In this document: in pieces, positions 1 to 42,289 of the stretch
Numbering within the stretch: position 1 is the stretch's first letter
How the letters are laid out: every line of letters begins with the position of its first letter
DNA from: Neoechinorhynchus agilis
Lineage: Eukaryota > Animalia > Acanthocephala
DNA: 64,000 nucleotides
Direction of reading: 5' to 3'
NCBI GenBank assembly: GCA_051530055.1
Contig: CM121343.1
Location: 1,458,389 to 1,522,388 of the forward strand
Notes under the pieces: model-generated
Seen by the model: only the letters and a program-made list of their open reading frames with translations
The model's database searches: none
What the model was told of the DNA's origin: nothing
Program-made: the position numbers and the translations under genes

Positions 1-2422
1 AACCAAATTTTAGACAAAAAAATTCTTGTTAAAAAGGAAAAAAGGGGTTCCGTATCAATATTATTTTTAATAAGAATACTGCTAAGCTTATTCAGCATAG
101 TAAGATAAAATGATGGTCTGTTTTCTGGGGGCCGGCCTCGTGCGAAAAAGCATATTGAACCCCCTAGAAATATTTTTAACACTTTAGAAATAAAAGGTGG
201 GGAAATTGATAACCTTTTGGCTCTTTTGATAAAAATATCTGTTTTTGTCAGAAGACTTTTAAAGGAAGAGTTTATAAAAATTCTGTGATTTTTACAGGGG
301 AAATCAACACCTAAAATATTGGAATGCGATCTAAAATTGATATTAGGGAAATTGAAATTAGAAGATAATTCATTAATTAGAAGCTTCCTCGAAGCCAAAG
401 TTTTAGTCAGTGGAATAAAGAAAGTTTTGTTATTGTTTGTAACTAAATTGGCTTTCCTAAGTTCCGACGACAAAGATTGCATAAAATTGGCTATATTATT
501 CGTAGAATATATCATCCGCATAAACTAAAGGAAATATGGAAGATGATTTCTTTAAATTTTTGAAAATATATATAAGGGCAATTAAAAATAAGGTGGGCGA
601 GAGTGGAGATCCTTGAGGAACACCATATCTAGAGAAAAATTTAGTGTGAGAAGGGTCCACCTCATAGTAAAAGGACTTGGATTCCATAAGATAGTTGGTT
701 TTGTAGATAAGATTAAGAGGAACTTTAAGATTAACTAAAGCCTCATAAAGAAAGCCACGATCCAAGGCATCAAAAGCCTTATTAATATCCAGCTGAATGA
801 GAAGTTTTTGTACATTAATAGCTTCATTCATAGAATTAAGAGAGGATAAAAGCGATGTGACACCTTTACCTCTAATGAAGCCATGGAAAAAGTCGGGGAT
901 TAGCTTTCTACATACTAAAAAGTCATACAGTTTCCCGTTCACCGCTCTTTCTAAGCAAGAGACGATTGGGTTCTGTATGGAAATTACTCTGATGTGGGAT
1001 GCGTTAAATATACGTCCTTTCGTTTTGGGAATAAAAATTTTCTTAACAATATTTATGTTAAGTAGATCATTAAAATCAATTTTCGATAAACGAAATCTAC
1101 TAAAAAAAGATAGATTTTGCCTTATCAGAAATAGAACTAAAAATTATGGGTGAAGTGCCATTTATATTATACGCTTTAGAGGGGTTAGATTTACAGGCCT
1201 CCAGAAAAACTTCAACTTCAAAATTCCACGAAAAGGACTTTTTATTAAAGATGGGAAGTGGAGGAGAAGAACATGCACTAAAAGTATGTGCCATCAAAAT
1301 AGACTCAATTACTGCAGGATAAGATATAGACCCTATCCAGTTAGATGCTTTTGCCTTCCAACAGACCGGTCTTCTTTTCAAAATACAGGACCAAAAGTCC
1401 TTACCAAAGGACTTAAGAGAGATCAGCTTCTTTTTGTCCAACGAAACTTGATGATAAAACTTAGCTGTGTAAAATTTTTTCATAAATAAGTTTTTAAGGG
1501 GAGCGTTACCATACAAGTCAGCTATAACAGCATTTTTATAAAATATGTTGGCTTCATGACAAACAGGAGGTCGCTTGATCACAGACTTAGTAATTAAATT
1601 TTTATGTACAGAGAATAAAATGGCATTGTTAAAGTCAGATAAGGAGGATGAAGTGGAAGAGTTCATAAAAGAAAGGAGATCATTATTAAATTTTGAAAAG
1701 CTTTTAGGATTAAAAACGAAAGTGTCCTTAAGAGCGATGCCATTAGATTTAAAAAGGATAAGGTCATGTCCTAACAATCTCTGTGACTGAAGTTGGGAAG
1801 CAGGATAAAATAAAATAGGAATTGACTTTTTAATAATTGCACCATCCAAGAAGGTATGTCTATTAGATTTAACATTATGAAAAGAAGGAAATTTGGGGAG
1901 CAAAAAATTGTGAAACTTAAAAAAGGGCCTAAAAGCATTTAAAAAATTACTATTGAAGTCGCCTACGATAAAGTCAGGATTCCAGTAACGGAGGATATGC
2001 AAAAAAGATTTAGTAAATATACCCACGTGTCTGGGTTGAATATACAAGTTGCAAAGGATAAGAGTAGGAGAGAAAAGGGATGAGGTTCCATATAAGGGAT
2101 TATTAAAAGAAATAATTTGCATTGCAAAAGAAATATTTTTAGTTTGAAATAAAATTTTAGAAGAGTGAGATTTAAGAATAAATGTTTGAAGTCCTCCAGA
2201 AAATCCAATGTGCTGATTGGTTGATGTGGAGCAAGGGAGAAGAACATGAGAATCATAATTATCGAAGAGAAGCATTTTAGAAAAGCCGGTTTCTTGAAAA
2301 CACAGCATGTTAACATAGTTATCAACTACACAAGGAGTAAGAAAATTAGGAAGACTAGAAGCCCTAGAGGCATTATATGTGATGAAAGAGAAAGGACATT
2401 CCTTATAATTGGAACAAGTCAT
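1..2422 (-). pseudogene. LINE ORF2 (APE endonuclease + reverse transcriptase), frameshifted
   Basis: ORFs 1100..2422 (APE) and 496..942 (RT core) lie in different frames; there is a further shift right after YADD. Confidence 0.85.
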
Positions 2423-3717
2423 TAAATGATTTTAGGACGTTTGGAATCTATAGATTCCAAGTTACGCAAAGATGGGGAAATATCTCTTTTATAATTTTCA
2501 CAATCGATCCAGTTATTAAAGTTAAATAATCTAGAAAAATTGTCGGAGGTAGAGTCTGGTGTAGAAATATTTTCCAGTTTGTGAAGGATCAAAGTAAGGA
2601 TGTACTTAAGTAATGAAATTTCTTTATCGGGATAAAGTTGAGAAGTATTAATGGAAGATTTTAAACTATCAAGAAAGGATTTTTCCGGAGGTTTGGGGGG
2701 AAGTTTAGGCTTGTGACCATCAGGGGAAGGTTGAGTCTTCGACTCCTTAGAGGAAAAACCGTCCGAAGAGAAAGGATTATGTTGTGGATAGAATTCTCTA
2801 TAACTAGAATTATGGAATACTCGCTGCTTCGATGGTATGGAATCGTCAAAATATTTTTGCGCGAATTTGCAAGAACGTGCAAAGGCCGGATGATTCTTGC
2901 CACAGTTTGCACAGGTAGCAGCATCAGAATTGGAGCAAGATGATTTGTGATGAGGACCTGCACAAAAGATGCATCTGGAGGGGAAGACACAGTCAGATTC
3001 GTGGTGCCCCCATCTCGAACACCTCTGACATATCGTCAAATTATAATCATAGATAGAGTCCCTGTATCGGTCAAAAGTGACCCAGTATGAGGAAAAATCC
3101 CTGCCGGAGTTAGCTAGACTCTCGGCGACATTGATAGTAGCTGAACATAGGATGGCGTAGGCTGAACTAGCGTTGGGTCTAAACAAATATTTGACCAGTT
3201 TTATACCTAACTCATTCTCAATTTTGCGAAAATCAGTAGTATCCAAGTCTTGAGGAGGATTCCTCATTAGAAAGGTGACTCTACGAGATAGGTCAACAGA
3301 TTGGATGCTTAACTCCCCTAGCATCTTAGAAAAGAGGTCTTTACCGGCCGCATCGAAAAAAATAAAAAGGATGTGGAATTTGGTCACAGAGAACCTCTTT
3401 ATCAAAAAATTCATATGTTTCTCACGACCATTCGGCAGTAAATACTTCTCGAAGAAATAACGCGAGAAATAGGAGGGGGAGTTAGTGCCCATGGCTTCTT
3501 TGGGAATTTTGATAACGAAATCCTCTTTCCTAACAGGACGCTTAAACCTTGATGCGTCGATAGAATGTTCCATCTGATCCCCTATGGAAACTTGTGCACA
3601 ATCATTCAAAACTTCACAATCACTCGGGGGGAGGGGGATAGTAGGAACAAACCTTAATCTAGACATGTCGGAAATAGGGTTTACCTGATTGCTGATATTC
3701 GAAGCGCAATTTTGCAT
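2422..3717 (-). CDS. LINE ORF1 gag-like nucleic-acid-binding protein (subfamily E)
   Basis: Open frame (the track starts it at 3777; MQNC at 3717 is the likelier start) with CQRCSRWGHHESDC, CIFCAGPHHKSSC and CANCGKNHPAFARSC. Its stop overlaps the ORF2 ATG (TAATG). Confidence 0.8.
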   Translation of the reverse strand: MQNCASNISNQVNPISDMSRLRFVPTIPLPPSDCEVLNDCAQVSIGDQMEHSIDASRFKRPVRKEDFVIKIPKEAMGTNSPSYFSRYFFEKYLLPNGREKHMNFLIKRFSVTKFHILFIFFDAAGKDLFSKMLGELSIQSVDLSRRVTFLMRNPPQDLDTTDFRKIENELGIKLVKYLFRPNASSAYAILCSATINVAESLANSGRDFSSYWVTFDRYRDSIYDYNLTICQRCSRWGHHESDCVFPSRCIFCAGPHHKSSCSNSDAATCANCGKNHPAFARSCKFAQKYFDDSIPSKQRVFHNSSYREFYPQHNPFSSDGFSSKESKTQPSPDGHKPKLPPKPPEKSFLDSLKSSINTSQLYPDKEISLLKYILTLILHKLENISTPDSTSDNFSRLFNFNNWIDCENYKRDISPSLRNLESIDSKRPKII

Positions 3718-12870: not shown

Positions 12871-12890
12871 TGTTGACAGTCATCAACATC

Positions 12891-13979
12891 ATGCGAAGTT
12901 TTTGTTCTGACGGAAAAAGCGTATTTAGTAGTGAACACCCTTCGAAACCTCCTGATCCTTCTGATAATCATGGAGGCTTTGTTCTGGAGAAGCGAGAGCA
13001 GCTACTCTCTAATCTCGAGCTACAACAATCACAAGTCCTGGGAAACAACTTCCAGTCGACATCATCAAAACAAATTCCAATATCAAATTACTTGTCTTCA
13101 CCGACAAAAAGATGGTCATACATAGCTATCTTCAAATCAAAACCAACCCTTCCCAAACAAATCATGTACGATCAAATAGTAAGCCCTTGGACTCGTTCTT
13201 TTAAAAACGATGGCATTAAAAGAATCGATCACTTAACATATTTCGCCGGCACGCTTAGAATTTATATGGTGTCACATACTTGGTTGGAAAAATTGGTCAA
13301 CTTCTCTATTTCTAATCTTCCCAAGGAAGTGTATGATGTTTCATATAGCTCTCAAAAAGTACAATTTCCTGTGAAAGGAATTGATCCTTCAATCACTAAT
13401 GAAGAGCGGGAAGATTTCGAGCAATCGTTCAATTGCAAGATCAAGTTTTTTTTTAATTCAAGGAGGACAGGTCAACCCATCTCGATTGCCATGGTGGAGG
13501 GACAAAGACAAGTTCGCGACGACTTATGCACACAACAATTTTGCTCGTTCAATTGCTTTGAAATTAACTTTGCGATGAAGTCGAACCATGAACAGGATGA
13601 CTTCATATTCCCACAATGCACCATCTGCCAGCAATGGGGCCACTGATGCCAAAATTGCCCCAATCCATCCTTAAAAAAATGTTGCCACTGCGCAGATGCC
13701 TCCCATGGTTCGGATCAGTGTATTAAGTCAAAAAAGTAGTGTGTGAATTGTCATGGACAACATTCGTCCTTCTATAAAGGCTGTCCTGAGTTCAAGAAAT
13801 ATTGGGCTTGGGCTAAAAAGTCTCTCAATGCCGGTGGAGACAACAGGAGCAAATTCAGGAATCCAACCGAGCAGTCAGCAGCGAAGCTCAACTCAGCGCT
13901 TCAAGCAGCCTCCTATCGTCAATTTGACAACTCTACTTCGGAACATTCCGTCAATGAGCCGTCAGCTCAAGTTGTGACC
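12891..13979 (+). mobile_element. LINE ORF1, subfamily D (3'-truncated)
   Basis: Starts CATC-ATG MRSF..KPPDPSD; knuckles CTICQQWGH(*)CQNC, CCHCADASHGSDQC, CVNCHGQHSSFYKGC. Confidence 0.8.
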
Positions 13980-17996: not shown

Positions 17997-18966
17997 TCAA
18001 AGTTCCATGGAATCAAAATAATAAGTTATTCAATCGAATAGCGCAAGTTTTGTAAGCTAAAACAGGAAATTTTATCGAAGTAAAGATAAATGCGATTTTT
18101 ATGTTTGGAGTGTTAAAGAATCATAATTAAAATCAATAAAAATGTAGATGATTCTTTTCAATTAGGTTTCAAGTTATAAATACAATAAATGGTAAACTGC
18201 GTTGAACTTTTCATAATCCTTAGGTTGAACGTCGAACTTCGAATGTATTTCTAGTTTTAAAGGCAGAATGCTTCACCGCTTAAACGTTTTTTGAAAATCC
18301 GTCAAGTACAATTATAACGACTATTCGAAAATGCATCCAATCACCGTCGGACGCAATGTTATTTATAAAAGACAAGCGTGCTTTCTTATTTGAAATTAAT
18401 TCTATGATACTCGAGTATTTTAATCAGAGATAAGCAGAAAATTTATCGAATTTTGTGTTCGATGCTTTTAATTCAAATCGTGTGCATTCTAAAAAACCTG
18501 TTAATTTTTAATTAACAAATTTTTCGTTTATTTATAGTTAAGAACGAAAGTGAGTTTGTCAAAAAGGTATTGAACTCGATCTCTCACTTGGGACAAATAT
18601 GTCATTTTAAACAACTAAGTGTAAAATATTAATATATTTAAAAGAATATTCCATTTCCGAGTAAAAACAAGCGATAAAAACATATAAACAAAATATTTGT
18701 TATGTAAGCTTATTATGGAGGGGAATTTTCCGAGTAAATGACCGAAGTAAATCTTAAGATAAGCCGACAGCATTGATTAGCGTTTGAATATTTATTACTT
18801 GATTGCATAAGAGTTTAGAGGCGAAATAATTTCAGTATAATTGTGAAAGCTAGAATAAAATTCTGATTCATGCCGTTCGATTATTCATATAAAGTGAATT
18901 CACGTCAAAACCGTTTTTTTAGTTTAACCAAAAGCTCAGCAATTCATTTATTCGGAAATGCCCTTT

Positions 18967-19173
18967 TCAGAACAATCCATAATCTATTGTCGTTTCAGTC
19001 AAATCCTCTGTTTTAAAAGGCTTGAACTCATTGGATAGCTTTTTGTTATATTTTAGTCCATATATAATTATGAGTGAGAAATACGTGACGAAGAAGAGTA
19101 CAATAACAATAATCGATATTACGGTGAATTTTGTAACTGCGGACATTTTCATTTTGCCTCGTCGAAACCTCAA
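18967..19173 (-). CDS. Duplicate of small membrane protein b
   Basis: Near-identical to 10494..10700. Confidence 0.4.
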   Translation of the reverse strand: MRFRRGKMKMSAVTKFTVISIIVIVLFFVTYFSLIIIYGLKYNKKLSNEFKPFKTEDLTETTIDYGLF

Positions 19174-19829
19174 AGAAAACTTTAATGTCGTCTCTTAGCA
19201 ACGAATATTTAATTGACGAATTTAAATGTTGGCATCTTTCAGTTGAACAAACATTCAAATGCTTAAAGCGTCACAACAAAAAAGCATTCAGCATTATTGT
19301 CGATCGATGTTGTTGTATAATAAATGAAGGAATTAGATCATTGACTTGATAGCAATCAGATTCTGTACTGAGATTGAAATTGCCTTCCGATATCGGTTCA
19401 CTGATTATTTCCGACGAGACTTAAGTGAACATAAAAGTTTTCAACGCTAATCGTACCAGTAAATAAAAACATGGAAGTGAAAAATTCATAAAAATTATGC
19501 CATGGAATTGATGTGGTGGTAAATAAAATCACAAAAATGTTCCCATTTTCCCTTTCAATTGTACGCTTTCAGTATTTCGATGCTGCATTGTTTCTAAAAT
19601 ATTTCCTTGGTATTAAAGAAAGTAAATAATTAAGCACCCTGTTTAATTTTCGTCAAGTATGAATTTAAAAAATTTTAAGGAATCAATTTTTAATTAATGC
19701 ACTATCATACCAGTCAATAATCAAAAACGTATCTTCTTTTATGACGATCTGTGATAAAAGTGACACCGTCAGTCTTAGCCGTTCAGTTTTTATAGTAAAA
19801 ATATAAGGATTAAATAAATCAATGTGCGT

Positions 19830-20400
19830 TATGTTCCCTTTTGCTAATCCAAACTAACACTTCAGCGTTTGAGGATGAGTTCGAACTGTATAGCGTACCC
19901 ATCTTACTCACAGAAAGTTATCGACGAAGCGACCACGAGAGCAACCCTTCTATTACAAAAAGGGCCCATCCGATAAACCTCAGCCTGGGTCAACACTGTT
20001 TCCAAAAACAACTAATTAACATGTACAAACCAAATGAAATGACAAAAGGGATCGAATCGAGATGCTACTACACGACAAAAGCGTTTAAACCCTGCTTTAT
20101 AAGGGAAAGGAGAACGACCATCGAAACCCTCAATGCGGTTTACCGCTTCAACTGCCCAATGGATGCCTATAACAAATCTTACGTCGGCCACACTACTTGC
20201 AGGTTAGAGGAACGAATTAAACAGCACAGATAAAAGACAAGTGTAATATATAAGTGCACTTCAACGGAACATGAAGGCAAGACAATGAGAGAGGTAATAA
20301 TCATAAAAACATATTTTCGAAGCAAGCGCTTTAGTACCCATTTTGACTCTAAAGGTTCGAATTTTTGGACTAGTTTGTGTATAGTCCAGACCAACTTTTT
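19830..20400 (+). mobile_element. Penelope GIY-YIG fragment (further family)
   Basis: AVYRFNCP..SYVGHTTCRLEERIKQH. Confidence 0.7.
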
Positions 20401-21949
20401 TAAATTTAAATTTTATTTCCAGTTTAATTAAAAGAAACAAACACAATGTAATGTTTACATTCTTGTGCAATTTTGGTTTATAGAACCTAAGAATTGTTTA
20501 AATCCTAGCTTGTCAACGTATTTTTAGTATTCGGTTAAAACATAAAGTTAAACCCCCCAACCGATCTCTAAATTCGGTTTCAATAAATAGGCTATAAATG
20601 AATTTCAATTATGTTTTATTTATAATTAATTACATCCATTTTACTGATTTTAAAGAATTCGGAATAGAAATTTGTCTCAGTTTCTCCATAGAAATTGTTA
20701 AATCCAACGTGTGCTTTAATTTTAGCTTAATGTAGTGATTTATTGTAATAAAAATGGATGCATCGATTAAGTTTGCAATGCTTAGATCTCAATTTTCATG
20801 CATACGAATTAATAAAAGTCCAAATAATAATTCTAAATAAGATCTAAGCGAATTCGTCTTTTGTTGTAAGCTACAGGTAGATACATTCTCTCTTTCATCA
20901 ATATGCGTCCCTTACAGTGACGCCAAAGCTTTACGGGCCGTTATTCTATGAGTATCTTTTTCAAGAACGCAAGTTCAATTAACAAAAAAGTTTATAAACA
21001 TTCACACCACCACACTCGGTAACTCAGCTGCCGTTCTGGTGTAATGGTCGAAAGGACGGATTGCAGTTTCCCCTTTAACAACGATTGTCCGGCTCTAGGA
21101 TTTTGGGCCCAATATTAACAATTGCGTACACTTCGACGTGCCGTGAGTACCTTCCGCCTGAAAACTATAACCAAGTAAAGCTAAACAGGATTTTATGTAA
21201 TGCACAAATATATCTATAAATTTAAAGAAGTCTTAATTTAGAAGTCGATTTAAATTCCTCTAAAATTTAAAATGTTGATTGAACTCAATTTATCTTAAAT
21301 ATACGTTCTCTAACAAAAGATAGCTCAGTTGGCAGACCGGAATATTGTATATGTCGTTTGTTCAAATCCGGAGCGATTTTGACAATCCATTCTATAGCAG
21401 ATTATTGAGTTCTTACCATGGATTAGAAGCTTAAAAATGTTCATATTTTTGCAATTGCAGACTGGCATTCCATTTTTTGTCTCGGCTGTCTGGTGTAGAA
21501 ACGGCATTTAATAATATGCTCTAACCGTCGATATTATGACAAATAGAGAAAGACATGTAATTCACACTATCATCGCTATCAGGCTTATGTGGAATCGAAT
21601 GAATACTTTTAACTCCTGAACTTAATCCGTCGATTTACTTCTGCATCTTTACCAAATTTTATTAGAATTAATGCTCATAGATCTGTAAAAAATAATAATT
21701 TTAACTAAAATTTCGTTATTCCGAATCATAAAAAATGAGCTACATTATTTAGCCACCAACAAAACATTTATGTTGGCGATCACCGTGATGTTTATGCGTT
21801 TTTCCTCAACGAATCACCATTATTTAATTTTTAATATTGTCTGGGTTGTTAAACCTAACATAAAGCAAGGCGAAACTGTTAATCAGTTGCAAAAAATTGT
21901 GTTCCGCGAACTCATAGTAATAATCAGGTTCCTGTTGACCTTGGTCCTC

Positions 21950-23065
21950 TGGATGACCGCGAGGGGGAAAGATGGATGTAGATTATGATCAATTTAAGGT
22001 CAGTGAAGAAATTTCCGTTATTGAGACGAATAGTAAGAAGGATGTTGTGGTGGTTTTACGCAATGAGTTTTCTGCTCCCCGCCCTTTTCATGAGGTTGTG
22101 GAAGGTAATATTGATGTTTTGTTAAGAGGTGGTCTTTGAAAGTAATTTATATGCGGCCCCCTCACCGTGGTGAATTACTAGATGCAGCGTTTAGACGTGT
22201 ATTTCGTTTTCCTAGAAGGAGAGATGATTATGTTTTAAAGATTGGTAGAGAAGATTTGGGTGAATTGTCAATACATGATTTGACTAATTTTATTATGCTG
22301 AAGGTCTTAAACCTACTAACTTTAATAACGAGGATATTTCTTGAAGCGGAAGGTATTAAATTATTTGAGGAGCTCCTTAGTTGCAAAAATATTAAATATA
22401 AGAATATATCGTGTAAAGTGAGACAACTTTAGTGTTAAACCCTCCTCCTAACATGTCAAAAGAAGAGTTAGGTTTATTTCAGAATACTTTTGGTCTAGTT
22501 CCAATTAAACATTTGAAGAAGAGCCCATCTACGGAGCCGTATGCTTTGCTTGTGTCGGTTAGGCTGGATGAGGTGGACAAAGCTCGGGGAACTTATTTTG
22601 GATTTCTAGCATACTGGATCAAATTTGTTTCTCGTCGATCAGAATCGATACATGATTACGTGTTAACTCAGTGCGCTAATTGCTGCAATTGGGGTCACAA
22701 TAGTTTTCAATGCTCTAACCAGGTTAAGTGTATGATGAGATGTGGTGGCCCGCATAATAAAATTAATTGTAGTAATTCTTGCACGATTACGTGTGCAAAT
22801 TGTTCAGATGGGTATGAAGCATATAAATCCGGCAGCGGTGAATTATTGGAAGTTGGCGAAGCCGGATAATTCTTTGAATGGCAATGCCTAGTTTAATAAG
22901 AGGGCGGAAAATGTTTACTGGACTGTTCAGAAGAAAAATATAGCCTAGAGAGAGGGTAAGTTTAAAGAGGAGTTTAGATGTGCTTAAGGAGAGAGTAGAC
23001 AGTTTGAATAAGAACATTGAGGAGAAGCAAAAAATGATTCATGATTTATTAATATTATTGTGGCG
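21950..23065 (+). mobile_element. LINE ORF1, subfamily F (longer copy, decayed)
   Basis: ORFs 22136..22432 and 22432..22869 with zinc knuckles; the 5' boundary is approximate. Confidence 0.7.
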
Positions 23066-23111
23066 ATTAAGAACGTGAAAAATACATTTTTATAATTGCT
23101 AGAGTTGCCCA

Positions 23112-23156
23112 ATTGCCGGCGTTTCGGAAATTTATTCTTTCCATCTTCAGGGTAAC
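23112..23156 (-). ncRNA. Hammerhead-like motif in a Penelope 3' UTR
   Basis: GTTACC-CTGAAGA-T-GGAAA-gaataaa-TTTCC-GAAA-CGC-C-GGCAAT; perfect 5-bp stem II, 5 of 6 stem I pairs, U16.1 appears mutated to C. Confidence 0.5.
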
Positions 23157-24145
23157 GTTAACAGTCACACAATTTGTCAAACGCGCACGTAGAACCCAGC
23201 GTTAAACTAACGCTGACGTAAGCAATCAATTATCACACTAATCGTGGAGTTTGAGAGTATTAAACATCTCATTGAATTTGATATTGATAATTGGTTTGTC
23301 GTGTTTAATGATTAATGCTCGAAAGAACCCATTAGTAAAAAGATGAGCATGGGGGATATGGTCCTGTCGTGTGGTCCTTTTAGAAATGTGGGCAGGTATA
23401 AAAAAGGTCGGTATAGAAGTCGATTTCAGAGGAAATGGCAAGAAGGGAAGTGGTTCCTGCTGCAAACGTGATACCGTTCCGATCATTTGTCGAAGATGAA
23501 CATTGGAAAGATTATATATAGCAGCATATGATAGTGAGTAGAATCACCGATGCGGATCAGAAAAAGGCCTTGGTTCAACGACTTTTCGTCAACTGACGAA
23601 GATTCTGATCCGAGATAAGTTGCAGTTGGTGAGTTATGAGGAAATTTGCAACACGCTCTTAAGTCTGCTGGAAATGTTCGAGCACGAGGTGACGGCTCGA
23701 TATAAGTTCGGTCAAGTTTTGATGAAGGCAGAACAAACTTATTCTGAATGGTTTGCTAAAGTAAAGGGAGCTGCAGAAGGCTGCAATGGATATGGTAACA
23801 AAAACATGAAGGCAGTTACTTATACGACGAAACAAAAAACTCTCAGTGCCCTCATAGGTTCTGCAAGAGGTGACTCACCGCATGGTGTTGTCTACGATAT
23901 ACCTTTTGGGGATTGTAGTAGGTCCTATATTGGACAAACTAACAATCTTCCACGCAGAATCTATGAGCATAAATATGCACTGAAGCGATGTGATGGAAAT
24001 TCAGCGATTGTCAATCACGTCAATACGACAGGACATTCCATCAATTTTGATGATGTCAAAATCTTAATGCGTAGTGACGATCGATATTCGCGTGTTATTG
24101 TTGAATCGATACACATTCACGATCGCGACATCAGCATGCGGCCGC

Positions 24146-24156
24146 ATCATGGATAA
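24146..24156 (+). repeat. ATCATGGATAA junction motif 1 (putative TSD)
   Basis: Exact 11-mer immediately before LINE A. Confidence 0.85.
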
Positions 24157-27100
24157 CACCCAAAAATGTTTTCGCAACCTGTTGTTGCGGCGGAGGGTGG
24201 CAAACGGCCACCCAATACTCTGAAAATACCTATATCGTCTTCAACAAGAGAGCTATTGCTCTCTAAACCAAACAACCCAAGCAGCTCTCACGAGGAACTC
24301 ATCTTCCTGGAGGCACCATTGAAGAAATCCAATGTTATTACTCTAAAAGCTAATCCCACTCTATCACGTGAAGAACTATTCAAACGCTTCCTTTCCCCTT
24401 GGCTTAAAACGCTGAACGACGACATCATAAGAATCAACTCTACTACATACTTCGCAGGTCAATTAAAAATATACTTCAATGGTAATCTTCATCTAAGCAA
24501 CTTTCACAAGTTCATCGAAACGAATTGTGACACGTCCGGAGTTCAAATTATAAACACAAGCTACAATTCAACCTTTCTCATGAATGGATTGTCTCCTGAA
24601 ATTGACACTGCAGATAAAAAAATCGTTCGAGAACAAGTTTGGATGCGAGATACTATTCTTCCTCAAATCGGCTCGTACAGCCAAGTTTATTCCCAAGGCG
24701 GTAGTAAAGGCTCCGGCCGACCGAAGGGACGCACTGATAAAGGAGAGATGTTGCTTCCAGGGGATGGAAGTTGATTTTTCAATGAATGATATTTCAAGAT
24801 TAGGCGACTTTACGTTTCCACGGTGCAGCATTTGCCAATCCTGGGGACATTGGTCCCAAAGATGCCTCACTAAAAAGTCCGTTTGCGCGTTTTGTGCGCG
24901 GAACCACCATTCGTCAACTTGCCCGAAGGACTTAAAATGTTGCGCTAACTGTAAAAAGGAAGGACATTGTGCTTTCTCGAAATCATGTCCAATTTTCAAA
25001 CAATATCTCAATTGGGCTCAAAGGACATACACAAATAACAGTGCTAAATCAGTACGTCCGGCTCCAAGTAAGATAGCAGTCCATGAATCTGCTCCCCCAC
25101 CGCCGAACAAATGACCCTCTGAGCGAACGTCCCCGGACCAAGTTTCTATCGACGAAAAACTTCGTCACTTTTCGGATAATATCATGCAGATGGTAGATCT
25201 CCGAATAAATATGGCTATACAAGGAATCGAGAAAAGATTGGCCTCTCATCTGGATGCCCTAATGGCTACTATAAAATCACGTTTGGACAACCTGTTTCCT
25301 CACGGATCTATAGACAGCCCGATTTCTTGCAAACGTGTTCGTAAAGTGTCTCCTGTCAATCCGAACCTATCCAACTCAGATGTTGAGATGCACGAGAACG
25401 AACTCTTCGTTCGGGATATTATCCAAGAACAATCTCAGGTTTGTGAAACGGGAGTTCACAAACTTATTCAAGAATGCTCAGTACGGAGTTAAGGATCGTG
25501 CAGTGGAACTCTGGCGGACGGGTTAGTATCCATAGACGGCTCTCAGAGGCCTGGCGGTGCAGCATCATCTTTATTCAGGAGTCCAAGTCTGTCTATAATG
25601 TTCACGACCTACCTCAAGGTCTAAGCTCACTGACCGAACAATTTGTCTTATTCTGTACCCCTCCTCATTCGCCCAATTCCCAAGTTCTACTATCTTTTTT
25701 CCTGCCTTCTCTCGGTCCCACACAGATCACATCGTTTTCCTCCGATGATCTGTCTTATTCAATTTTTTCATTTTGTATTAAAGGCTCTAAACTTCTATTA
25801 GCTAACATCTATGTCCGGCCCCATAAGATACATCTCCCTCGCAATAAGTCCATTTTGAAGAACATCTTAGGGTCAGGTATTGACTTTTGTTTTGCCGACT
25901 TTAATGATCCTTCGCAGAAATGGATCAATTCTATTATTCGTTCTGGAGAATCCCACAACCTCATTACGCCCGATTATCCTACTTTTACTGACGGATCTTC
26001 ATCCTCGTACCTGGATCTGTGTATATACCGAAAAAGTGGCTTCTACAAACCTATTTTAATTTCTCAATCCTCTCTATTCCAAGTCGCTGGACACGACGTT
26101 TTAACTTGGGAGCTCGACAAGAACGTTCTGTTATCGTCTCTTTAATGCTGCTACCCGCTTTTATCTCTCTGGGTCAAAATCCTCCGAGCTTAAAGATATT
26201 AACAATTTTTTGGCTGACACTAGTAACAATTTCCTTACCACAGTTAGGAGATCAGTAGGAGTACCTCGGAAATCCAACCTATTATCCCTTTATGGTAGGG
26301 AACTCTTTAAAGCTAAGGCAGCGGGCGACACTAGATCCTGTAAGTTTTGGTCATCTCTTTACTGGCCGTGCAAGGTCAGATTCCAGATCGCCCAAGATCG
26401 CAAAATGATCAGCAAGTATCTACCCCATTCATCGGAATGGTGGAGAGTTGTAAACCGGAAACGCTCCTTCCCCTGGAAAAGGGCAGCTGCAGCCTGGATT
26501 AGATCTTCAGGCTTTGATACAGTCATCAGGGCGCTTTGTTCCGAACACTCGAATGAGGCCAGTCCGATCCCCATAGCCACCAACTTCATACTTCCCAAAC
26601 CACGGAGAATTGATCTCACCAAAAAGGATTTTTTACAGTGGTGGACCTCTAAGAACCTCACCTCATGCAACGGCTCTTCAGCCTGTTTTAAAGCAACCAA
26701 CGTTTTGAGCAGGGATAACATAGCATCCTTTGCCAGTGTCATGCTACTAGCCTCTCCTGAAGAATGGTCAGAAATTAATATTTCAAAAAGGATTTTCCTA
26801 CGCAAGGGTAAGGTTCGATCAATATCTTCTTCGGGAAATGTGAGACCAATCTCTATCCAAAACTCTTTGGTTTCCATCTATGAGAGAGTCTTAGCAAAGC
26901 GGATTGTCGAGTTCTCCTGTGAGCATGATCTCATCGATAGACGATGCCATGGTTTCGTTCCCGGCAGATCAGTTCATTCCGCTATGAACGAAATTATACG
27001 TAATTTTGGACAGAACCGTCGTGCCATGAATATCTTGATTTCGTTTGATATCAGCAAGGCATTTGACAATATTAATATCGATTTTATCTTAAATATCTTA

Positions 27101-27915
27101 CGCTTTTTAACTTTCCTTTCAATTTCATAGCTAGGGTTCACAATACCCTGAAGTCCAAACGGTTTTTCTTCTCGGATGATCCCGCTCGCTTGGTTTACTA
27201 TCAGGTTAAAGGAGTTCCCCAAGGCTCTCCTTTATCACCGATTCTTTTCTGTTTGGCCTCCCAATATATTGTTCAAAACTGTAAAATCTGTCGTTCAATC
27301 ACCATGTACGCGGACGACCTCACCGTGGTTATAAAAGAGAGCAACTATGTACAAGCTCAAAAGAAGCTTGCAGCAGTTCTCAATTTCCTAAAAGAAAAAC
27401 TTCCACACATGGGGCTTGCACTAAATAATAATAATAAGACCAAGTTTCTAATAAAATCAAAATCCGTCGTTGGTAAGCGACACATTAGAGACTTTGTCAA
27501 GAGGTTTTTCGCCCTTGATTTTTTCCCGGTTTTTCATAGACTCAACATTCTGGGCTTTACCCTCAGTAGTAATCTGTCATTCTCGGCTGACCTGAATAAG
27601 ATGAAACGACTCTTCAAATGTGCTAATGCCAAAGCAAAGCGTGCTGCCCGACTAGGCCTCAATCTTAAGTCTAGCAAATCTATATGGAACGCGTGGGCCA
27701 TATCTGGTCTAGTCTTCTATTCTAGAGGACGACCGCCCGAACAACGCCAGAGCTTCCGATGCACCTTCCTGAGACTCTGCTCCACTCTCCCTTTCGCATG
27801 GGCAAACACCGTCGACTGGACCGCCAAAGTGGATAAATGGACAGCCATCGGCAATGATTGAAACGTTTGATTGACTCAGTCTTTCTCACATGGTCCTTTG
27901 CGAATAAATTTTTTT
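24157..27915 (+). mobile_element. Compact LINE subfamily A, near full length
   Basis: ORF1 pieces 24166-25492 with three knuckles; ORF2 pieces 25474-27861 (QWNSGG, IQES, ADFN, GHD, FDISKAFD, GVPQGSPLSP, YADD, FYSRGRPP); ends AATAAA-T7; flanked by ATCATGGATAA. Confidence 0.93.
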
Positions 27916-27926
27916 ATCATGGATAA
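27916..27926 (+). repeat. ATCATGGATAA junction motif 2 (putative TSD)
   Basis: Exact 11-mer between the LINE A tail and LINE B; its ATG opens B ORF1 in frame. Confidence 0.85.
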
Positions 27927-30900
27927 CAAGTTGTCGTGGATGGACATGTGCAGTTTTCAATGCCAAGAATATTGCACTGCTCATCTCAATGTCACTCAGA
28001 AACCTCCCGACCCTCCTGATGATTGTGAGGGTTTTAAGGATAGCGGCATAAGGCCGCCCAATACATTAAAGATACCTATCTCTTCGGATAGACTAAAGGA
28101 ACTTAGACTTCATCAATCAAAAGTCAGCTCGACCAAACATAAGTATTTGAAACTTCCTACAAAAAAATGGCCCTTCGCCATCACTATTATTTCAAACCCG
28201 ATTTTGCCCAGAGAATCCCTTTATAAGGATTATCTCGGACCTTGGCTTAAAACCTTCAACGACGATGTCCAACGATGACTTTACCTTTCCCAGATGTGCT
28301 GGATGTCAGGAATGGGGACACTGGGTACAACAATGCCCTTCCAAGAAGATCGTCTGCGCTTTTTGCGCTGAATCTCACCATAGTAATGCTTGCCCCAGAA
28401 AGTTAAAGAAATGTGCGAACTGTGACAATTTGGGTCACTGTGCCTTCGCGAAGTCATGTTTAGCGTTCAAAGAATACGCTAATTGGGCCCTGAATCCAAT
28501 GTCGCTAGCGCAGATCAGCAATGGTGTTAGGCCTGTCAGGAATTTCACTTCCAGCGAAAACACACAACGATGGCATTCAACTTCTATCCTTCCTCCTTCG
28601 ACAAACCACTCAAACAAGTTAATTGATAATAGCCTTTCATCAAATAACATCTCCTCTTCGAATCTCGACCGTGTCTTAAACGACTTCTCGGCAAATATTA
28701 TGAAGATGGTAGACCTCAGAATTACGACGGCTATCAACAATCTGGAAAAACGGTTCAACTATCTTACAGAGCTTTAATCGGCTAAATTATGCATCGGTCG
28801 AAGGTAAATCTTCAGTAGCCAAAAGACCTCTTAATCAATCGTTGGAATGCGTCGATGTGGAAGGAAATATCGATACGAACGTTGACGAACTCTTTGTGAA
28901 ACAAATAATTGACGAGCAAAGAGTAGTATGCGACGAGGGTATCTCTGATTTAATCAAGAGACGAAGAGCAATATTATGACAGAAGTAAGGTTGGTACAGT
29001 GGAACGCAGGTGGTCGAGCCAGTTTGCCTATTATAGCATCCACAGCCCATAATGCCGAAATAATTTTCATTCAAGAAGCCAAGTGCGTATATCGCTTGGC
29101 AGATCTGCCCGACTCTATAGCGAATCTCAGCTCTAATTCCTTAATCTTCATTACTCTTCCATTTAAGCCCAACTCCCAGGGCATATTATCTATTTCTAGA
29201 GCGAGTCTCATTCCATCGCTTATCTGTAACTTTGTCAGTTTGGATTTATCTTATGCCCTTTTTTCTGTAATCCCCGATTGTAAAAAAGTTTCGGTGGCGA
29301 ATGTTTACTTTCGACCGAATAAAATTCATCATAGAGCTATCAAAGACATACTTAAAAGTCTATTGCTCTCGGGGGTCGATCTCCTTTTCGGCGATTTTAA
29401 TGACCCATCCGGTAAGTGGATTCGAGCGATCGTTCGTATCACTGACCATCATGAAGTTATTTGCCCTCATCTCCCAACTTTCATACCAGAGGTTGCTCGT
29501 TCTTAGACATATGCATAGCAAAGAAAGGCTTGCATTTGAGGCCAATAGTGTCCTCACAAACTGCAGTTTTTAATAGCTGTGGGCATGACGCGATCCTATG
29601 GAACCTCTCTAATAACTCCCTATTGAATAGGAAATTCAAACTGGCTTCACATAATATCCACTTTTTTAATTTGGCTGCTAGGATATCCCTCAATACTAGT
29701 CAATCATCTTCTCTTTACGAAATAATGTCCTTGCCGAAGCAAGTGACTCATTTCTGACAGTAGTGTCTAAGCGCAATTTCGCGTCTACTAAGCCCCGGCT
29801 TCTGAATTTATATGGGAAACAATTGTTTTTAGCTCGTTCGGATGGTAATCAGGTGGCAGCTAAGTTTTGGTCTTCCCTTTATTGGCCATGTCGGTCTAGA
29901 TATCAAATGTCGTGTGATATAAGAGCGATCGAGTCTTTAGTTCCCTACTCCTCTCAATGGTGGCGAATAGCATCCAAAAAAGTTTTGTCTCCTGGAAGAG
30001 GGCGGCGGACGCCTGGATTAGGGAGGCTGGGATTCCCCGTGTGGTGGCCGATCTGTGCACAGAACATTCAGCTGGTTGCTCTAACATCCCAGTCCATCTC
30101 GAGTTTTTGCCCATCAAACGCCATAGACAGGATCTTTCTGCTAATGACATAATTAAGGTTTAGCGGCCAAAAAATCTATCCTCCTCAAATAGTAAATCCG
30201 ATTCCTTTAAGACCACAAATGTTCTATCTGAGGAGAATGTTGACCATATAGCAAGGGCCTTGGTACGAGCTCCGCCACAAGAGTGGGGTTCGATTAATCT
30301 GGCAAAACGCATATTTCTAGTGAAAGACAAACGTCGAAAAATATCATCAGTCAACGATGTTCGGCCTATCTCCATACAAAACTCCTTAGTCTCGATTTAC
30401 GAGAGAGCTCTTGCCCGATACATTTTGGAGTTTGCGGTGGAGCACAATTGAGTTGACCCACGTTGCCACGGGTTTCTATCAGGGAAATCGGTGCACTCAG
30501 CAATTAGGGAGATCGCCAATCATTTGTACAATAATCAAAACTCAACGAACTTATTGATTTCGTTTGATATATCCCGGGCATTTGACAACATCAATATATA
30601 CTTTATCATTAATATTCTTAAATTCTTTGATTTTCCGTACAATATCATCGCTCGGGTCTCTAATACATTAAGGTCTAAATCCTTTTTCTTCCAAGACGAT
30701 CCCGTTAATAGCACATATTATCAGACCAAAGGAGTTCCTCAGGGTTCTCCGCTGTCCCCTATACTCTTCTGCCTCGCCACCCAGTTTATCATACAGAACT
30801 GCAGGGTCTGCAAAGCCATCTCCATCTACGCAGACGATATGACTGCGGCCATTAAGGAGGTCAATTATCTGCGAGCTAAAAAACAGCTTCTCGCTCTCTT

Positions 30901-31447
30901 AACTTTTCTTGAAAACACACTACCTATGATGGGTCTGCAGCCGAACCCCAAGAAAACCCAGTTTATTATTAAATCCAAGTCACGAACGGGCAAAATAAAG
31001 CTTTTGGAGGCATTCAACAATTTTTTTGGTACCAATATTAACAGAACCTCCTCTAAGCTGACCATTTTGGGTTATTCATTTACGGCTAATTTCTCCCCCT
31101 TTCATGACTTAGCCAAACTTAAAAAATTATTAAAACTTGCGAACATAAAGGCACGAAGACCTCAACGGCTAGGCCATCCTTTGAAGTGTATTCGTTCAGT
31201 TTGGAACGCATGGGCTATTTCGGGCCTTGTTTTTTACTCCCGCGGCCGACCACCTGACCAACGTATGGTATTCCGCAATACCTTCCTTAAAGCTCTCCAA
31301 CATCTTCAATACCCTTTTGCGCATACTACAGATTGGTCCGACAAAACGTACCGATGGATCGACTTAAAAATGTCCTGAATCGCTATCCTCACTGTCCGAT
31401 CCAAAATTTGTAAATACATTGCGATTCCTAACGAATAAATCCTTGTT
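27927..31447 (+). mobile_element. Compact LINE subfamily B, near full length, with a ~360-bp deletion in ORF1
   Basis: MDNK..KPPDPPDD ORF1 with knuckles; ORF2 28976-31378 with the same motifs; ends AATAAATCCTTGTT; flanked by ATCATGGATAA. Confidence 0.93.
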
Positions 31448-31458
31448 ATCATGGATAA
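31448..31458 (+). repeat. ATCATGGATAA junction motif 3 (putative TSD)
   Basis: Exact 11-mer after the LINE B tail; reads S-W-I-K in the LINE C ORF2 frame. Confidence 0.85.
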
Positions 31459-31855
31459 AGACCTCGGGGATCATGGCTGTGGTGAAAACACTCTGGAAAG
31501 GCCACTCCAATGGTTGTTCAGTGAGCTCCCAGCCAGTCTTCTTACCTCTTAAACCAAGAAGGTTTGATCTCCAAGTGTCCGACATTGTTCAATGGTGGAG
31601 GTCGAGGGATAAGACCCCTGACAATGGCTCATCGATCTGCCTGAAAGCCACTAATGTTGAAAATAAAGTTAATATTGGCAGAATTGCTCAAGCCATGATC
31701 TATGCCTCCGCCGAGGAATGGGCGCACATAAACCTCTCGAAAAGAATTTTCCTGATTAAAACGAAGGGTAAAAAAGTTACGGGTGGAGACGTTCGACCGA
31801 TTTCTATACAAAACTCATTGGTATCTATTTACGAAAGGGCACTGGCTAAATCTCT
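31448..31855 (+). mobile_element. Compact LINE subfamily C, internal ORF2 fragment (host of A and B; left stub ~24135-24156)
   Basis: SWIKTSG..EEWAHINLSKRIFL..DVRPISIQNSLVSIYERALAK. Confidence 0.85.
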
Positions 31856-34014
31856 TACAATTTGCGCCACTTTATCGTACAGAATTATATCGTTGAAACT
31901 TTCCCCAGGGACTGTTTTTAACATCGCTTCCACATCACATCTCACCTCAATGTCCGAAATCTTCAGTGTGGGAATGAAATCGGGCCCCATTGCTAAAACG
32001 CTGATTTCATGTTTTGTGAGTGTTCTGCTAGACCAATTAACTACTCCCAAGTCTCGCATCTCTTCCTGAGCTTCCTCCGCCTCCACGATTCCCAGTGTGT
32101 TCAACTGCTTTTTCACTATACTTCTAGTCTTATAATCATGATCTACCATTTTTCCTTTCACGAAATCGTTTACGAAGCATATGTCCTGCGATTCCATGAT
32201 CGAGACCAGACTTTCCCACCTTGTCCTGATTTCGGCCTTCAATTTCCCTATCCGAAATCTCGCGTTTCTAATCGCAAATTTCATGATGGACTTTTCAAGA
32301 TTGAATAGATGTTTTAAGCCAGTTAGTCCTATTATCCCTGTTTTAATTCTTGCGCACACAGGTACGGCTTCTTGTTTCGGCACTCGCTCATAAAATGAAT
32401 GGACATCTCTGCATTAAATGCTCTTTTTTCGTAGTCCAATAATCGATAGATATCTTTACGGCAGTTGTCACCATACTGCTTGCTAATTTCGTTGAGAATA
32501 ACTTTCGGTGCGAATTTAACTTCTTTTTGGGTGACTCTTTATCGCTCCGAGAAAAATTAACATTTATTCCATTAATACTTCGAGACAATAGTGAACAAGG
32601 AAGATTACTCAATCTGGAAGGAAATTGCTCAATGATGGAAAGTTTGTGAAATTAAATAAGGCTCCAACAGTGGCACGTGAACGTGCATTCAATCGACATC
32701 TTATGGACTTACAGAAGTCAGGAAAAATATCACAAGAATGGTACAATAACACACCCGAAACTCCATAAACCGAAACTGAATGTAAGACCTGTGATAGCCT
32801 CTTATAATTCCTTTAGCCATAGATTGGCAAAGGTGATTAAACAATTACTCAGACAATATATCGAGAAGAGCGATTCAGAAGCGAAGGATGGACCTGCGTT
32901 TGCAAAATTAGTAAGAAAGATGGATCCCAGAAACAGGTGGTTTATGACAGTGGACATTAAGTCTCTATTTACAAATATACCACTTAAAGAAGCAACAAAA
33001 TCAGCAGCAACCCTACCACAAGTAAAATGCGAGTCACCTTCCCTAAGCGTGGAGGAATGGATAAAGCTGATTGATTGGTGTACCACGAGAACATCTTTCA
33101 GTTTCGAGGATCTAATTATTGATCAGATCGATGGTGTAGCGATGGGATCTCCGTTAGGACCAATACTGACTCACATATTTCTAACAGAATACGAAAAGAC
33201 GGTTCGAAGAATCATTCCTGAGATATTGGTATGGTACCGGTATGTGGACGACGCCTTCCTCGTTTTAACTGAGAATCCCGAAACTATTGATGTGCCGAAA
33301 AAACTAAATAGCATTCATCTGTCGATCCAGTGGACTACAACATTTCAAAGTCCAACAGGTGAATTGTCTTTTTTGGACGTAATAATGAAACGCAACGGGA
33401 ACGAAATAGATACCAGAGTCTTTAAAAAACCAGGAATACCATGGGGCTTATCAGATTGAAAGAGTCATGGGGCGACACGATATAAAGTCGCAGCGGCGAA
33501 GACTCTTTTCAATAGAGCACGAGAGATATGCAGCAATAGCAGAAATCTATCGGCAGCCATGATTGAGATAGAGGGTATGCTCCAAAAACGTCACTTTCCG
33601 AGATGGACGATCAAAAGAGCTAAATTTTGTAGAATGAAGGAAGGATATGCCACATCGGACAAAATGGTGATAAAATGCCTGAAGAACACGTATGTGGGTG
33701 AAAAGGCACTCAATCAGATATCGCACACTTTGTGGAAAGTGAAAGAACCGAAGATGATACCATATTTTCCATCCGCCCCGAAATTGAGTGGCCTGTTCAA
33801 AAAGAAACCGAAGACACCAACACCTTGTGTCGTATATACTATACCTTGCATAAATTGCCCGAAGAGGTATGTCGGACAAACGAAGCAAGGGTTGAATAAG
33901 AGAGTTAACCAGCACAAGTATAGTGTGAGGGGAGGCGACACTTCTTCGGCGATTTTTAATCATGTGTTGGAGGACGGCCATATAATTGATTTCGATGGAG
34001 CAAGCATATTGGAA
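31856..34014 (+). mobile_element. Penelope P-A copy 2 with inverted 5' segment
   Basis: 31856-32585 is the element 5' part on the minus strand (ORF 31829..32383 matches 14024..); 32590-34014 matches 14437-15894 on the plus strand. Confidence 0.9.
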
Positions 34015-42285: not shown

Positions 42286-42289
42286 CGTT

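What the first reader, a model, noticed from the sequence alone, without database searches (positions are those of the whole stretch)
24135..31470. Site-specific head-to-tail LINE array built inside a related LINE, with the target supplying an ORF1 start codon
Seen: the exact 11-mer ATCATGGATAA occurs at 24146, 27916 and 31448, precisely before A, between A and B, and after B. Deleting A and B re-joins GCG GCC GCA TCA TGG ATA AAG ACC TCG GGG = AAASWIKTSG, matching AAAAWIRSSG (A) and AADAWIREAG (B), so the site lies within ORF2 of relative C. A and B are strongly diverged, end AATAAA + 7-9 nt with no poly(A), and B ORF1 (MDNK..) begins at the ATG inside the 11-mer; in A that ATG is one base out of frame. 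Known: sequence-specific APE LINEs (R1, SART/TRAS, Tx1) and self-nesting elements (Zepp) exist. Inference: two sequential insertions at the same nick with identical TSDs, by a clade that targets relatives or a conserved multicopy sequence this site mimics, and that may take its initiator codon from the target.
Basis: partly seen in the sequence, partly recalled or inferred. Interest (0 to 1): 0.85.

Follow-up and report, generated by a model that had tools for sequence, protein, structure and literature searches.

The report
Two LINEs stacked at one site
Two different dead copies of a rare, acanthocephalan-type LINE retrotransposon sit head to tail at exactly the same 11-base spot inside a fragment of a third relative, which points to a strong insertion-site preference but not to the proposed borrowing of a start codon from the target.

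Summary
ATCATGGATAA occurs exactly three times (24146, 27916, 31448; 0.1 expected). It brackets two full-length but frameshifted LINEs, A (3.77 kb) and B (3.53 kb). These share only about 50-57% protein identity. Removing A, B and two repeat copies restores an in-register ORF2 fragment of a third relative, C (AAASWIKTSG). The simplest reading is two separate target-primed insertions at one nick, each with an 11-bp target-site duplication and no poly(A).

The lineage has ORF1 with three Cys/His knuckles, a very divergent APE-like nuclease, an RT and an ORF2 of about 820 aa. It is rare in public data, and its named relatives are acanthocephalans (Pomphorhynchus laevis, Neoechinorhynchus agilis). 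An intact P. laevis copy has a 12-bp duplication of unrelated sequence. Its sister copy has yet another flank, and other copies in the window (D, E) lack the 11-mer. So the clade is not uniformly site-specific, and "targets relatives" is not supported.

All members with a visible 5' end have their own ATG 17-36 nt inside the element, so the target-supplied start codon is probably incidental. In a genome this LINE-dense, a chance double hit remains a live rival. This is a new member of a known kind, of moderate interest.

The parts
24146..24156 (+). First copy of the 11-bp target-site duplication ATCATGGATAA (5' of A)
   Evidence: Exact match. Preceded by GCGGCCGC, which continues C's reading frame.
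24157..27915 (+). LINE A, full length but dead. ORF1 starts at ATG 24166 and has three Cys/His knuckles at about 24800-24990. ORF2 has an APE-like part (25474-26142) and an RT plus C-terminal domain running to the stop at 27861. The 3' UTR is 54 nt and ends GAATAAATTTTTTT.
   Evidence: ORFs and frameshifts. RVT_1 E = 1.9e-12 and 5.5e-14. Exo_endo_phos_2 E = 0.11. At least 3 frameshifts or stops.
27916..27926 (+). Second copy of the 11-bp duplication, between A and B. Its ATG (27919) is in frame with B's ORF1.
27927..31447 (+). LINE B, a different family of the same lineage, full length but dead. A conserved-context ATG is at 27946. ORF1 knuckles are at about 28290-28480. ORF2 runs from 28976 (APE-like) to the stop at 31378. 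The 3' UTR is 69 nt and ends GAATAAATCCTTGTT.
   Evidence: Exo_endo_phos E = 0.0055. Several frameshifts and two in-frame stops.
31448..31458 (+). Third copy of the 11-bp duplication (3' of B). It is read as the codons S-W-I-K of C.
24137..24145 (+). Left stub of C (GCGGCCGCA = Ala-Ala-Ala in C's frame). C's 5' truncation point is about here.
   Evidence: Aligns with GCAGCTGCA in A and GCGGCGGAC in B. The clade's conserved Trp three to four codons upstream is absent.
31459..31864 (+). Right part of C: an ORF2 fragment from the linker to the start of the RT (...RPISIQNSLVSIYERALAK). It is cut at 31865 by an inverted Penelope-like segment.
   Evidence: tblastx to A (56-83% identity) and B (43-95%). 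tblastn with P. laevis ORF2 residues 357-490. Repeat block from 31865.
23818..24120 (+). Upstream host of C: the GIY-YIG part of a Penelope-like element fragment (PLE1), read through ...VESIHI.
   Evidence: GIY-YIG E = 0.00099, below the Pfam cut-off. Aligns with other PLE copies in the window. A 96.5% identical copy is at 11054-12870.
12871..13979 (+). LINE D, ORF1 part only (ATG 12891). It is joined to the sister copy of PLE1 at 12870 without the 11-mer.
1..3714 (-). LINE E, a more intact and more distant member. ORF1 ends at 2422 and ORF2 starts at 2422 (TAATG overlap). The 3' end runs off the window. The 5' end abuts an integrase-like ORF on the + strand.

Best explanation
Shown:
- A 5'-truncated LINE (C) lies in a Penelope-like element fragment.
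- Two full-length LINEs of two other families of the same lineage (A and B) sit inside it at one and the same position.
- Each is bounded by the same 11 bp.
- Neither has a poly(A) tail.
- All three are now dead.

Inferred mechanism:
- There were two separate target-primed reverse transcription events.
- In each, the element's APE-like nuclease nicked the bottom strand immediately left of ATCATGGATAA and the top strand 11 bp to the right.
- cDNA synthesis started at the defined 3' end (...GAATAAAT plus a 6-7 nt T-rich tail), as in 'stringent' LINEs without poly(A).
- Filling in the stagger gave the 11-bp duplication.
- The first insertion left two copies of the site, and the second used one of them.

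Hitting the same nucleotide twice implies that the nuclease or RNP of this A/B sub-lineage strongly prefers this sequence. The site in C is most likely a chance match to that preferred sequence, not a designed target.

The ATG inside the duplication is probably not the working initiator. The elements carry their own ATG 17-36 nt further in.
For: Three exact 11-mers at the three junctions, 0.1 expected. A and B are diverged families. The empty-site join restores C's frame in register, including the clade-conserved Trp-Ile encoded by the 11-mer itself and Ala-Ala-Ala just upstream. Both elements have complete 5' ends starting CA... directly after the repeat, and both end GAATAAAT+6-7 nt.

An intact relative in P. 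laevis is flanked by a 12-bp direct repeat, i.e. the same stagger length. That repeat is target DNA, because a 63%-identical sister element shares the 3' UTR up to ...TTTATTTATT and then diverges.

The element type is a LINE. RVT_1 is detected, with nearest solved relatives L1 ORF2p and R2. The nuclease gives weak APE hits with motifs aligned. ORF1 has three Cys/His knuckles.

Precedent: in target-specific LINEs the bottom-strand cut is strictly fixed (PMC5035012). R1Bm, which like A and B lacks poly(A) (own knowledge), needs the downstream target sequence for accurate initiation (PMC7265360, PMC6007223).
Against: Only one site is available. No other copy of family A or B could be found in the window or in any accessible collection.

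Other members of the lineage sit at unrelated sequences, so site preference is not a clade property.

The window holds about 6 insertions of this lineage in 64 kb. At that density a genome-wide scan could meet an exact double hit by chance, especially with a mildly biased nuclease (my estimate, not a tool result).

C's 5' end lies only about 9 nt from the site, which is unexplained.
Confidence: 0.6

Rival explanations
1. Chance double hit. The lineage has no real sequence specificity, only the mild bias typical of APE nucleases and a fixed 11-12 bp stagger. In a genome packed with its copies, two insertions happened to use the same nick.
For: D, E, L005 and L012 all have different flanks. Acanthocephalan genomes are about two-thirds repeats, dominated by LINEs (PMC7943196). 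There are about 6 lineage insertions per 64 kb here. Scaled to a few hundred Mb, that predicts on the order of one exact same-site, same-strand pair per genome even under uniform targeting (my estimate).
Against: For one given window the prior is about 1e-4 to 1e-2. Both events also gave exactly 11 bp. The two elements are the only copies of their families in the window, and both are at this site.
Confidence: 0.2
2. The 11-mer belongs to the Penelope-like element, not to C. It would be the last codons plus the TAA stop of the PLE1 ORF (...MRPHHG*). C, B and A all then homed to it in turn, with C's truncated 5' end joined through TGGATAA microhomology. D in the sister PLE1 copy would be a fourth hit with a small target deletion.
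For: The PLE1 reading frame runs open to the TAA inside the 11-mer. C's apparent 5' end is only 9 nt from the site. D joins the sister PLE1 copy 38 bp upstream in the same orientation.
Against: The 9 nt before the 11-mer read Ala-Ala-Ala in C's frame, matching AAAA in A, AAD in B and AAA in L007. This is about 2e-4 by chance. After ESIHI the PLE1 reading lacks the GN(K) motif present in the two other PLE copies.
Confidence: 0.07
3. One integration event. The reverse transcriptase copied B RNA, jumped to the 3' end of an A RNA and copied that too, so the array was made in a single step.
For: End-to-end template jumping is known for LINE reverse transcriptases (own knowledge). A and B are directly abutted.
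Against: A jump would join B's 5' end directly to A's 3' end. The middle 11-mer then has to be part of B's RNA and identical to the target, which again requires a site-specific donor.
Confidence: 0.05
4. The 11-mer is the elements' own conserved 5' terminus, carrying a Kozak-optimal start codon. Integration is guided by annealing of the cDNA end to a matching target.
For: A and B share 13 nt (ATCATGGATAACA) at the 5' end, although the following sequence cannot be aligned. ATCATGG is a strong initiation context (own knowledge). The P. laevis duplication also holds an in-frame ATG.
Against: The P. laevis repeat is target-derived. D has no such terminus. In A the ATG is out of frame and would create an upstream ORF overlapping the real start. 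A downstream ATG, with context shared between A/L005 and between B/E, is present in A, B, D, E and L005.
Confidence: 0.05

Closest known systems
R1-clade sequence-specific LINEs (R1Bm in 28S rDNA; SART1/TRAS1 in telomeric repeats)
   Same: Two ORFs, with three Cys/His knuckles in ORF1. APE-type nuclease N-terminal to the RT. A fixed-length target-site duplication, with different lineages sharing one site. No poly(A) in R1Bm (own knowledge). One member here (E) has the UAAUG stop-start overlap described for SART1 (own knowledge).
   Different: No multicopy target was identified. Other members insert at unrelated sites. ORF2 is short (about 820 aa) and has no C-terminal Cys-His motif. The nuclease is too divergent to match the R1Bm or TRAS1 nuclease structures by sequence. 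The 5' UTR is only 9-24 nt. RT phylogeny was not done.
Tx1L and other L1-clade target-specific LINEs that insert into another transposon or repeat
   Same: A LINE sitting at one defined sequence inside another mobile element.
   Different: Here there is only one instance. The host is a dead fragment of a relative. There is no evidence that the host family is the regular target.
Zepp (Chlorella) self-nesting LINE clusters
   Same: LINE copies piled into relatives.
   Different: Zepp nests in the tails of earlier copies (own knowledge). Here the site is inside ORF2 coding sequence, and the homologous codons of the other relatives are intact and lack the 11-mer.
'Stringent' LINEs with short or microsatellite-like 3' tails (I factor, CR1/L2, RTE)
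   Same: No poly(A), and a defined 3' end. The P. laevis-type members end in (TTTA)n. A and B end in a conserved GAATAAAT plus a short T-rich tail.
   Different: Those clades are mostly not site-specific, and exact double insertions with identical duplications are not a described feature of them.

Membership tests
Non-LTR retrotransposon (LINE), APE type | Reverse transcriptase of the LINE type | tested here: met
   RVT_1 in A at E = 1.9e-12 and 5.5e-14. A profile of the lineage hits human L1 ORF2p at 1e-15 and Bombyx R2 at 5e-10.
Non-LTR retrotransposon (LINE), APE type | Apurinic/apyrimidinic-like endonuclease N-terminal to the RT | tested here: inconclusive
   Only sub-threshold Pfam hits: Exo_endo_phos 0.0055 (B) and 0.0078 (L001); Exo_endo_phos_2 0.001 (L001) and 0.11 (A). 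hhalign against a recognised LINE APE domain gave E = 7e-4 and probability 26%, with the Y-P, GDFN, LDL and HD motifs aligned. There was no PDB match by sequence. The AlphaFold model was too poor to use (pLDDT 37).
Non-LTR retrotransposon (LINE), APE type | Target-site duplication and a 3' end defined by reverse-transcription priming | tested here: met
   11-bp duplication around A and B. 12-bp duplication around the intact P. laevis copy.
Sequence-specific LINE (R1-like behaviour) | Most or all copies lie in the same target sequence | tested here: inconclusive
   A and B share one site. D, E, L005 and L012, which belong to other families of the lineage, have unrelated flanks. No further A or B copies were obtainable.
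Sequence-specific LINE (R1-like behaviour) | The target is a conserved multicopy sequence (rDNA, snRNA, spliced leader, telomere or microsatellite) | tested here: not met
   No Rfam family is found anywhere in the window. The site is inside a LINE ORF2 fragment.
R1 clade (phylogenetic) | RT groups with R1/SART/TRAS in a LINE phylogeny | not tested
   No reference LINE sequences were available in the tools. The next-best database hits drop from 461 to 117 bits and are unnamed.
Zepp-like self-nesting | Insertion into the same place in relatives | tested here: not met
   The homologous codons in A, B, E, L001 and L005 are uninterrupted and do not carry the 11-mer.
Penelope-like element (the host of C) | RT followed by a C-terminal GIY-YIG nuclease | tested here: inconclusive
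   GIY-YIG hits at 0.00099 and 0.00016, just below the Pfam cut-off. GIY...YIG...R...H...E motifs are shared among four copies. No hammerhead ribozyme was found by Rfam.

The most novel reading that the evidence does not exclude
Families A and B are true homing LINEs whose recognition site is ATCATGGATAA, either in C-family ORF2 or in a still unseen multicopy target. They have almost no 5' UTR. They would then depend on the duplicated target, a Kozak-optimal AUCAUGG, for translation start or co-transcription: a LINE that takes its initiator codon from its landing site. The P. laevis copy, whose 12-bp duplication also holds an in-frame ATG, would be a second case.
Probability: 0.12. Interest if true: 0.7.

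Novelty: new member of a known kind. Interest (0 to 1): 0.4.

Why it matters
If the site preference holds genome-wide, this would add a previously undescribed, very divergent LINE lineage to the short list of APE LINEs with sequence-specific integration. The lineage is so far seen mainly in acanthocephalans. It would also offer a new nuclease specificity to study. If the preference does not hold, the locus is a reminder that exact double insertions turn up in LINE-saturated genomes. Either way, the lineage is worth cataloguing for annotation of syndermatan genomes. Its features are a short ORF2, an APE domain below Pfam thresholds, no poly(A) and 9-24 nt leaders.

Tried and rejected
1. Recent tandem duplication of one element. 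Rejected: A and B are only about 69% identical in their best 336 bp.

2. The P. laevis 12-mer as a conserved element terminus. I first read it that way because it contains AATAAA and ATGCAA, the latter also seen at the starts of E and L001. Rejected: the sister element L012 shares the 3' UTR and diverges exactly where the 12-mer starts.

3. Homology between D's 20-nt leader and B's leader, and between the 38 nt after the PLE1 break in the two duplicated units. Neither is better than shuffles.

4. Finding more copies. Protein-pattern scans of metagenome, prokaryote-genome and viral collections found nothing relevant. A DNA-pattern scan for the 3' junction gave 116 chance hits, none encoding the LINE.

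5. Structure prediction of the nuclease. pLDDT was 37, so no fold search was run.

6. rDNA or snRNA target. There are no Rfam hits in the window. From memory, the 11-mer resembles a conserved 18S stretch (..CATGGATAAC..). This could not be tested and is only a lead.

7. Literature. I found no description of this lineage or of LINE site specificity in acanthocephalans.


Full report
**Observation.** ATCATGGATAA occurs exactly three times in the 64-kb window, at 24146, 27916 and 31448, all on the + strand. Chance would give 0.10 matches, and none of 100 shuffles gave three. The copies lie immediately before element A, between A and B, and after B.

**A and B.**
- A is 24157-27915 and B is 27927-31447. 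Each carries an ORF1 with three Cys/His knuckles, then an ORF2 with an N-terminal nuclease-like part and a reverse transcriptase.
- Both are dead. Each has at least three frameshifts or in-frame stops.
- They are not duplicates of each other. blastn aligns only 336 bp at 68.8% and 69 bp at 76.8%. Protein identity is 48% in the nuclease part and 53-57% in the RT and C-terminal part.
- Both begin CA... directly after the repeat. Both end in a conserved GAATAAAT plus 6-7 T-rich bases, followed directly by the repeat, with no poly(A).

**The interrupted sequence (C).**
- Joining the left flank with one 11-mer to the right flank gives one open frame: ...HQHAAASWIKTSGIMAVVKTLWKGHS...RPISIQNSLVSIYERALAK.
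- This frame is colinear without gaps with A (..KRAAAAWIRSSGFDTVIRALCSEHS..) and B (..KRAADAWIREAGIPRVVADLCTEHS..). It is also colinear with residues 357-490 of an intact relative's ORF2.
- The 11-mer itself encodes the Trp-Ile that is conserved in every member examined. The 9 nt before the first copy encode Ala-Ala-Ala, as in A and in L007.
- So the site lies in a fragment (C) of a third family.
- C's homology does not extend further left, because the conserved Trp three to four codons upstream is missing. C is therefore 5'-truncated at about 24137.
- On the right, C is cut at 31865 by an inverted Penelope-like segment.

**An alternative for the target.** The 11-mer could instead be the end of the Penelope-like ORF (...MRPHHG*, with TAA inside the 11-mer), with C joined by microhomology. 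I considered this because C's 5' end is so close to the site and because D joins the sister PLE copy 38 bp upstream. Three Ala codons in register are about 2e-4 by chance. The PLE reading after ESIHI also lacks the GN(K) motif of the other copies. I give this alternative about 7%.

**Surroundings.**
- The window is a dense nest of retroelements.
- The flank 22292-24107 is a 96.5% copy of 11054-12870. Three further blocks (7806-11057/16275-19531; 13980-14308/inverted 31865-32193; 14428-15896/32587-34015) show that the region is a large, rearranged tandem duplication.
- The flank ends in a GIY-YIG domain of a Penelope-like element.
- In the sister unit the same PLE fragment is followed at 12871 by another member of the LINE lineage, D. 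D has only its ORF1 part, with ATG at 12891, and no 11-mer.
- A more intact, more distant member, E, lies on the minus strand at 1-3714. Its ORF1 and ORF2 overlap as TAATG, and its 5' end abuts an integrase-like gene.
- A further ORF1 fragment lies at 22115-22866 and 11185-11586.
- That makes about six insertions of the lineage in 64 kb.

**What kind of element.**
- The RT is LINE-type. Its nearest solved relatives are human L1 ORF2p (1e-15) and R2 (5e-10).
- The nuclease is very divergent. Pfam gives only sub-threshold Exo_endo_phos and Exo_endo_phos_2 hits in three members, and there is no PDB match by sequence.
- An hhalign comparison with a recognised LINE APE domain gave E = 7e-4, with the Y-P, GDFN, LDL and HD motifs aligned. 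The AlphaFold model was unusable. I read the nuclease as APE-like, not proven.
- ORF2 is short (823-828 aa in intact relatives) and ends in a lineage-specific WAISGLVF.SRGRPPEQR motif without a Cys-His motif.

**Relatives elsewhere.**
- The lineage is rare in public protein data. Word-indexed searches found only a handful of members. A full HMMER scan of 1.84 billion representatives gave 8 hits at E <= 1e-30.
- The named hits are acanthocephalans: Pomphorhynchus laevis GJ496_002456 and Neoechinorhynchus agilis KAL7678098.1. The rest are unnamed assemblies and metagenomes.
- The source genome itself is not in the index. An acanthocephalan or other syndermatan origin is likely but not shown. P. 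laevis is reported as about 66% repeats, mostly LINEs and PLEs (PMC7943196, PMC8557442), which fits this window.

**The intact P. laevis copy.**
- L005 has ORF1 8673-9965 and ORF2 9983-12454. It is flanked by a 12-bp direct repeat AAATAAATGCAA, seen in 3% of shuffles anywhere in the two flanks.
- A 63%-identical sister element, L012, shares the 3' UTR up to ...CTTTATTTATTTATT and then continues AATTTGTCACC.
- So the 12-mer is target DNA, the stagger is 11-12 bp in this lineage, and insertion sites differ between copies.
- The 3' motif GAATAAAT of A and B recurs in L008, whose contig ends there, and in L010.

**Mechanism.** The anatomy fits two ordinary target-primed insertions. The bottom-strand nick falls left of the 11-mer and the top-strand nick 11 bp to the right. 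Priming is at a defined 3' end without poly(A), as in stringent LINEs. In R1Bm, a downstream target sequence is needed for accurate initiation (PMC7265360, PMC6007223). The bottom-strand cut of target-specific LINEs is strictly fixed (PMC5035012). After the first insertion the site exists twice, and the second element used one copy. The steps are inferred; only the product is seen.

**Site specificity.**
- Two hits at one nucleotide by two families argue for a strong preference.
- It is a single locus, however, and every other member whose flanks can be read lies somewhere else.
- At about one lineage insertion per 10 kb, a genome of a few hundred Mb would hold tens of thousands of copies. That predicts on the order of one exact same-site, same-strand pair even under uniform targeting, and more with a mildly biased nuclease. 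This is my estimate.
- If this window was picked out of a whole-genome scan, chance is therefore a serious rival (about 20%).
- 'Targets relatives' is not supported. The homologous codons in A, B, E, L001 and L005 lack the 11-mer and are intact.

**Start codon.**
- B's longest ORF1 does begin at the ATG in the 11-mer. The P. laevis duplication also contains an in-frame ATG.
- Against this, A, B, D, E and L005 each have an ATG of their own 17-36 nt further in. Its context is shared between A and L005 (CAAAAATGT) and between B and E (GACATGT); D reads ATCATGC. It is followed by similar residues (M-C/R/F-S).
- In A the 11-mer's ATG is out of frame. If transcribed, it would form an upstream ORF over the real start.
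- L012's flank has no ATG.
- Two of three independent flanks containing an ATG is not beyond chance (about 6%).
- I therefore regard the target-supplied initiator as unproven and probably incidental. The very short leaders (9-24 nt after the duplication) remain an unusual feature.

**Verdict.** This is a new member of a known kind: an APE-type, poly(A)-less LINE lineage, possibly with sequence-specific integration in one sub-lineage. Interest is moderate. The decisive test is a flank census of families A, B, C and PLE1 in the source genome.

Noticed in passing
window 7806-34015: There is a large, rearranged tandem segmental duplication. 7806-11057 matches 16275-19531 (98.3%). 11054-12870 matches 22292-24107 (96.5%). 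13980-14308 matches 31865-32193 inverted (96.7%). 14428-15896 matches 32587-34015 (96.3%). The second unit carries extra insertions (19532-22291, and A+B).
   Followed up: partly
window 34101-36278 (+): An intact 725-aa ORF. Its RT is closest to R2 proteins among solved structures (4e-6). By eye, its C-terminus has a Cys-His motif plus a restriction-like nuclease pattern. It starts 86 bp after a Penelope-like GIY-YIG domain is cut off at 34015. The 236 bp from 34016 recur inverted at 53859-53624 (88%). This is possibly an active restriction-like-endonuclease LINE.
   Followed up: partly
window 2418-2424 (-): In LINE E, the ORF1 stop and the ORF2 start overlap as TAATG. From memory, this is the UAAUG coupling arrangement described for SART1.
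   Followed up: no
window 4779-5273, 14630-16000, 32677-34015, 19841-20233: Several Penelope-like element copies with C-terminal GIY-YIG domains. One has an inverted 5' part next to the forward copy (31865-32193 versus 32587-34015), as described for PLEs. Rfam finds no hammerhead ribozyme anywhere in the window.
   Followed up: partly
window 3712-4062 (+): An integrase-like ORF (..HVDLVGPLPPS..TIVDRFTRW..SDRGSQFTS..) from an LTR-type element. LINE E interrupts it or abuts its N-terminal side.
   Followed up: no
window 42001-46000: Strongly negative GC skew (-0.38 to -0.41) over 4 kb, unlike the rest of the window. Not examined.
   Followed up: no
L005 8667-8678 and 12594-12605; L012 2700-2765: P. 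laevis-type members of the lineage end in a (TTTA)n microsatellite-like tail, whereas the window's A and B end in GAATAAAT plus a T-rich tail. So there are two tail types within one lineage.
   Followed up: partly
window 24137-24144: A NotI site (GCGGCCGC) lies directly before the first 11-mer in otherwise 40% GC DNA. It is explained here as three Ala codons of C.
   Followed up: yes
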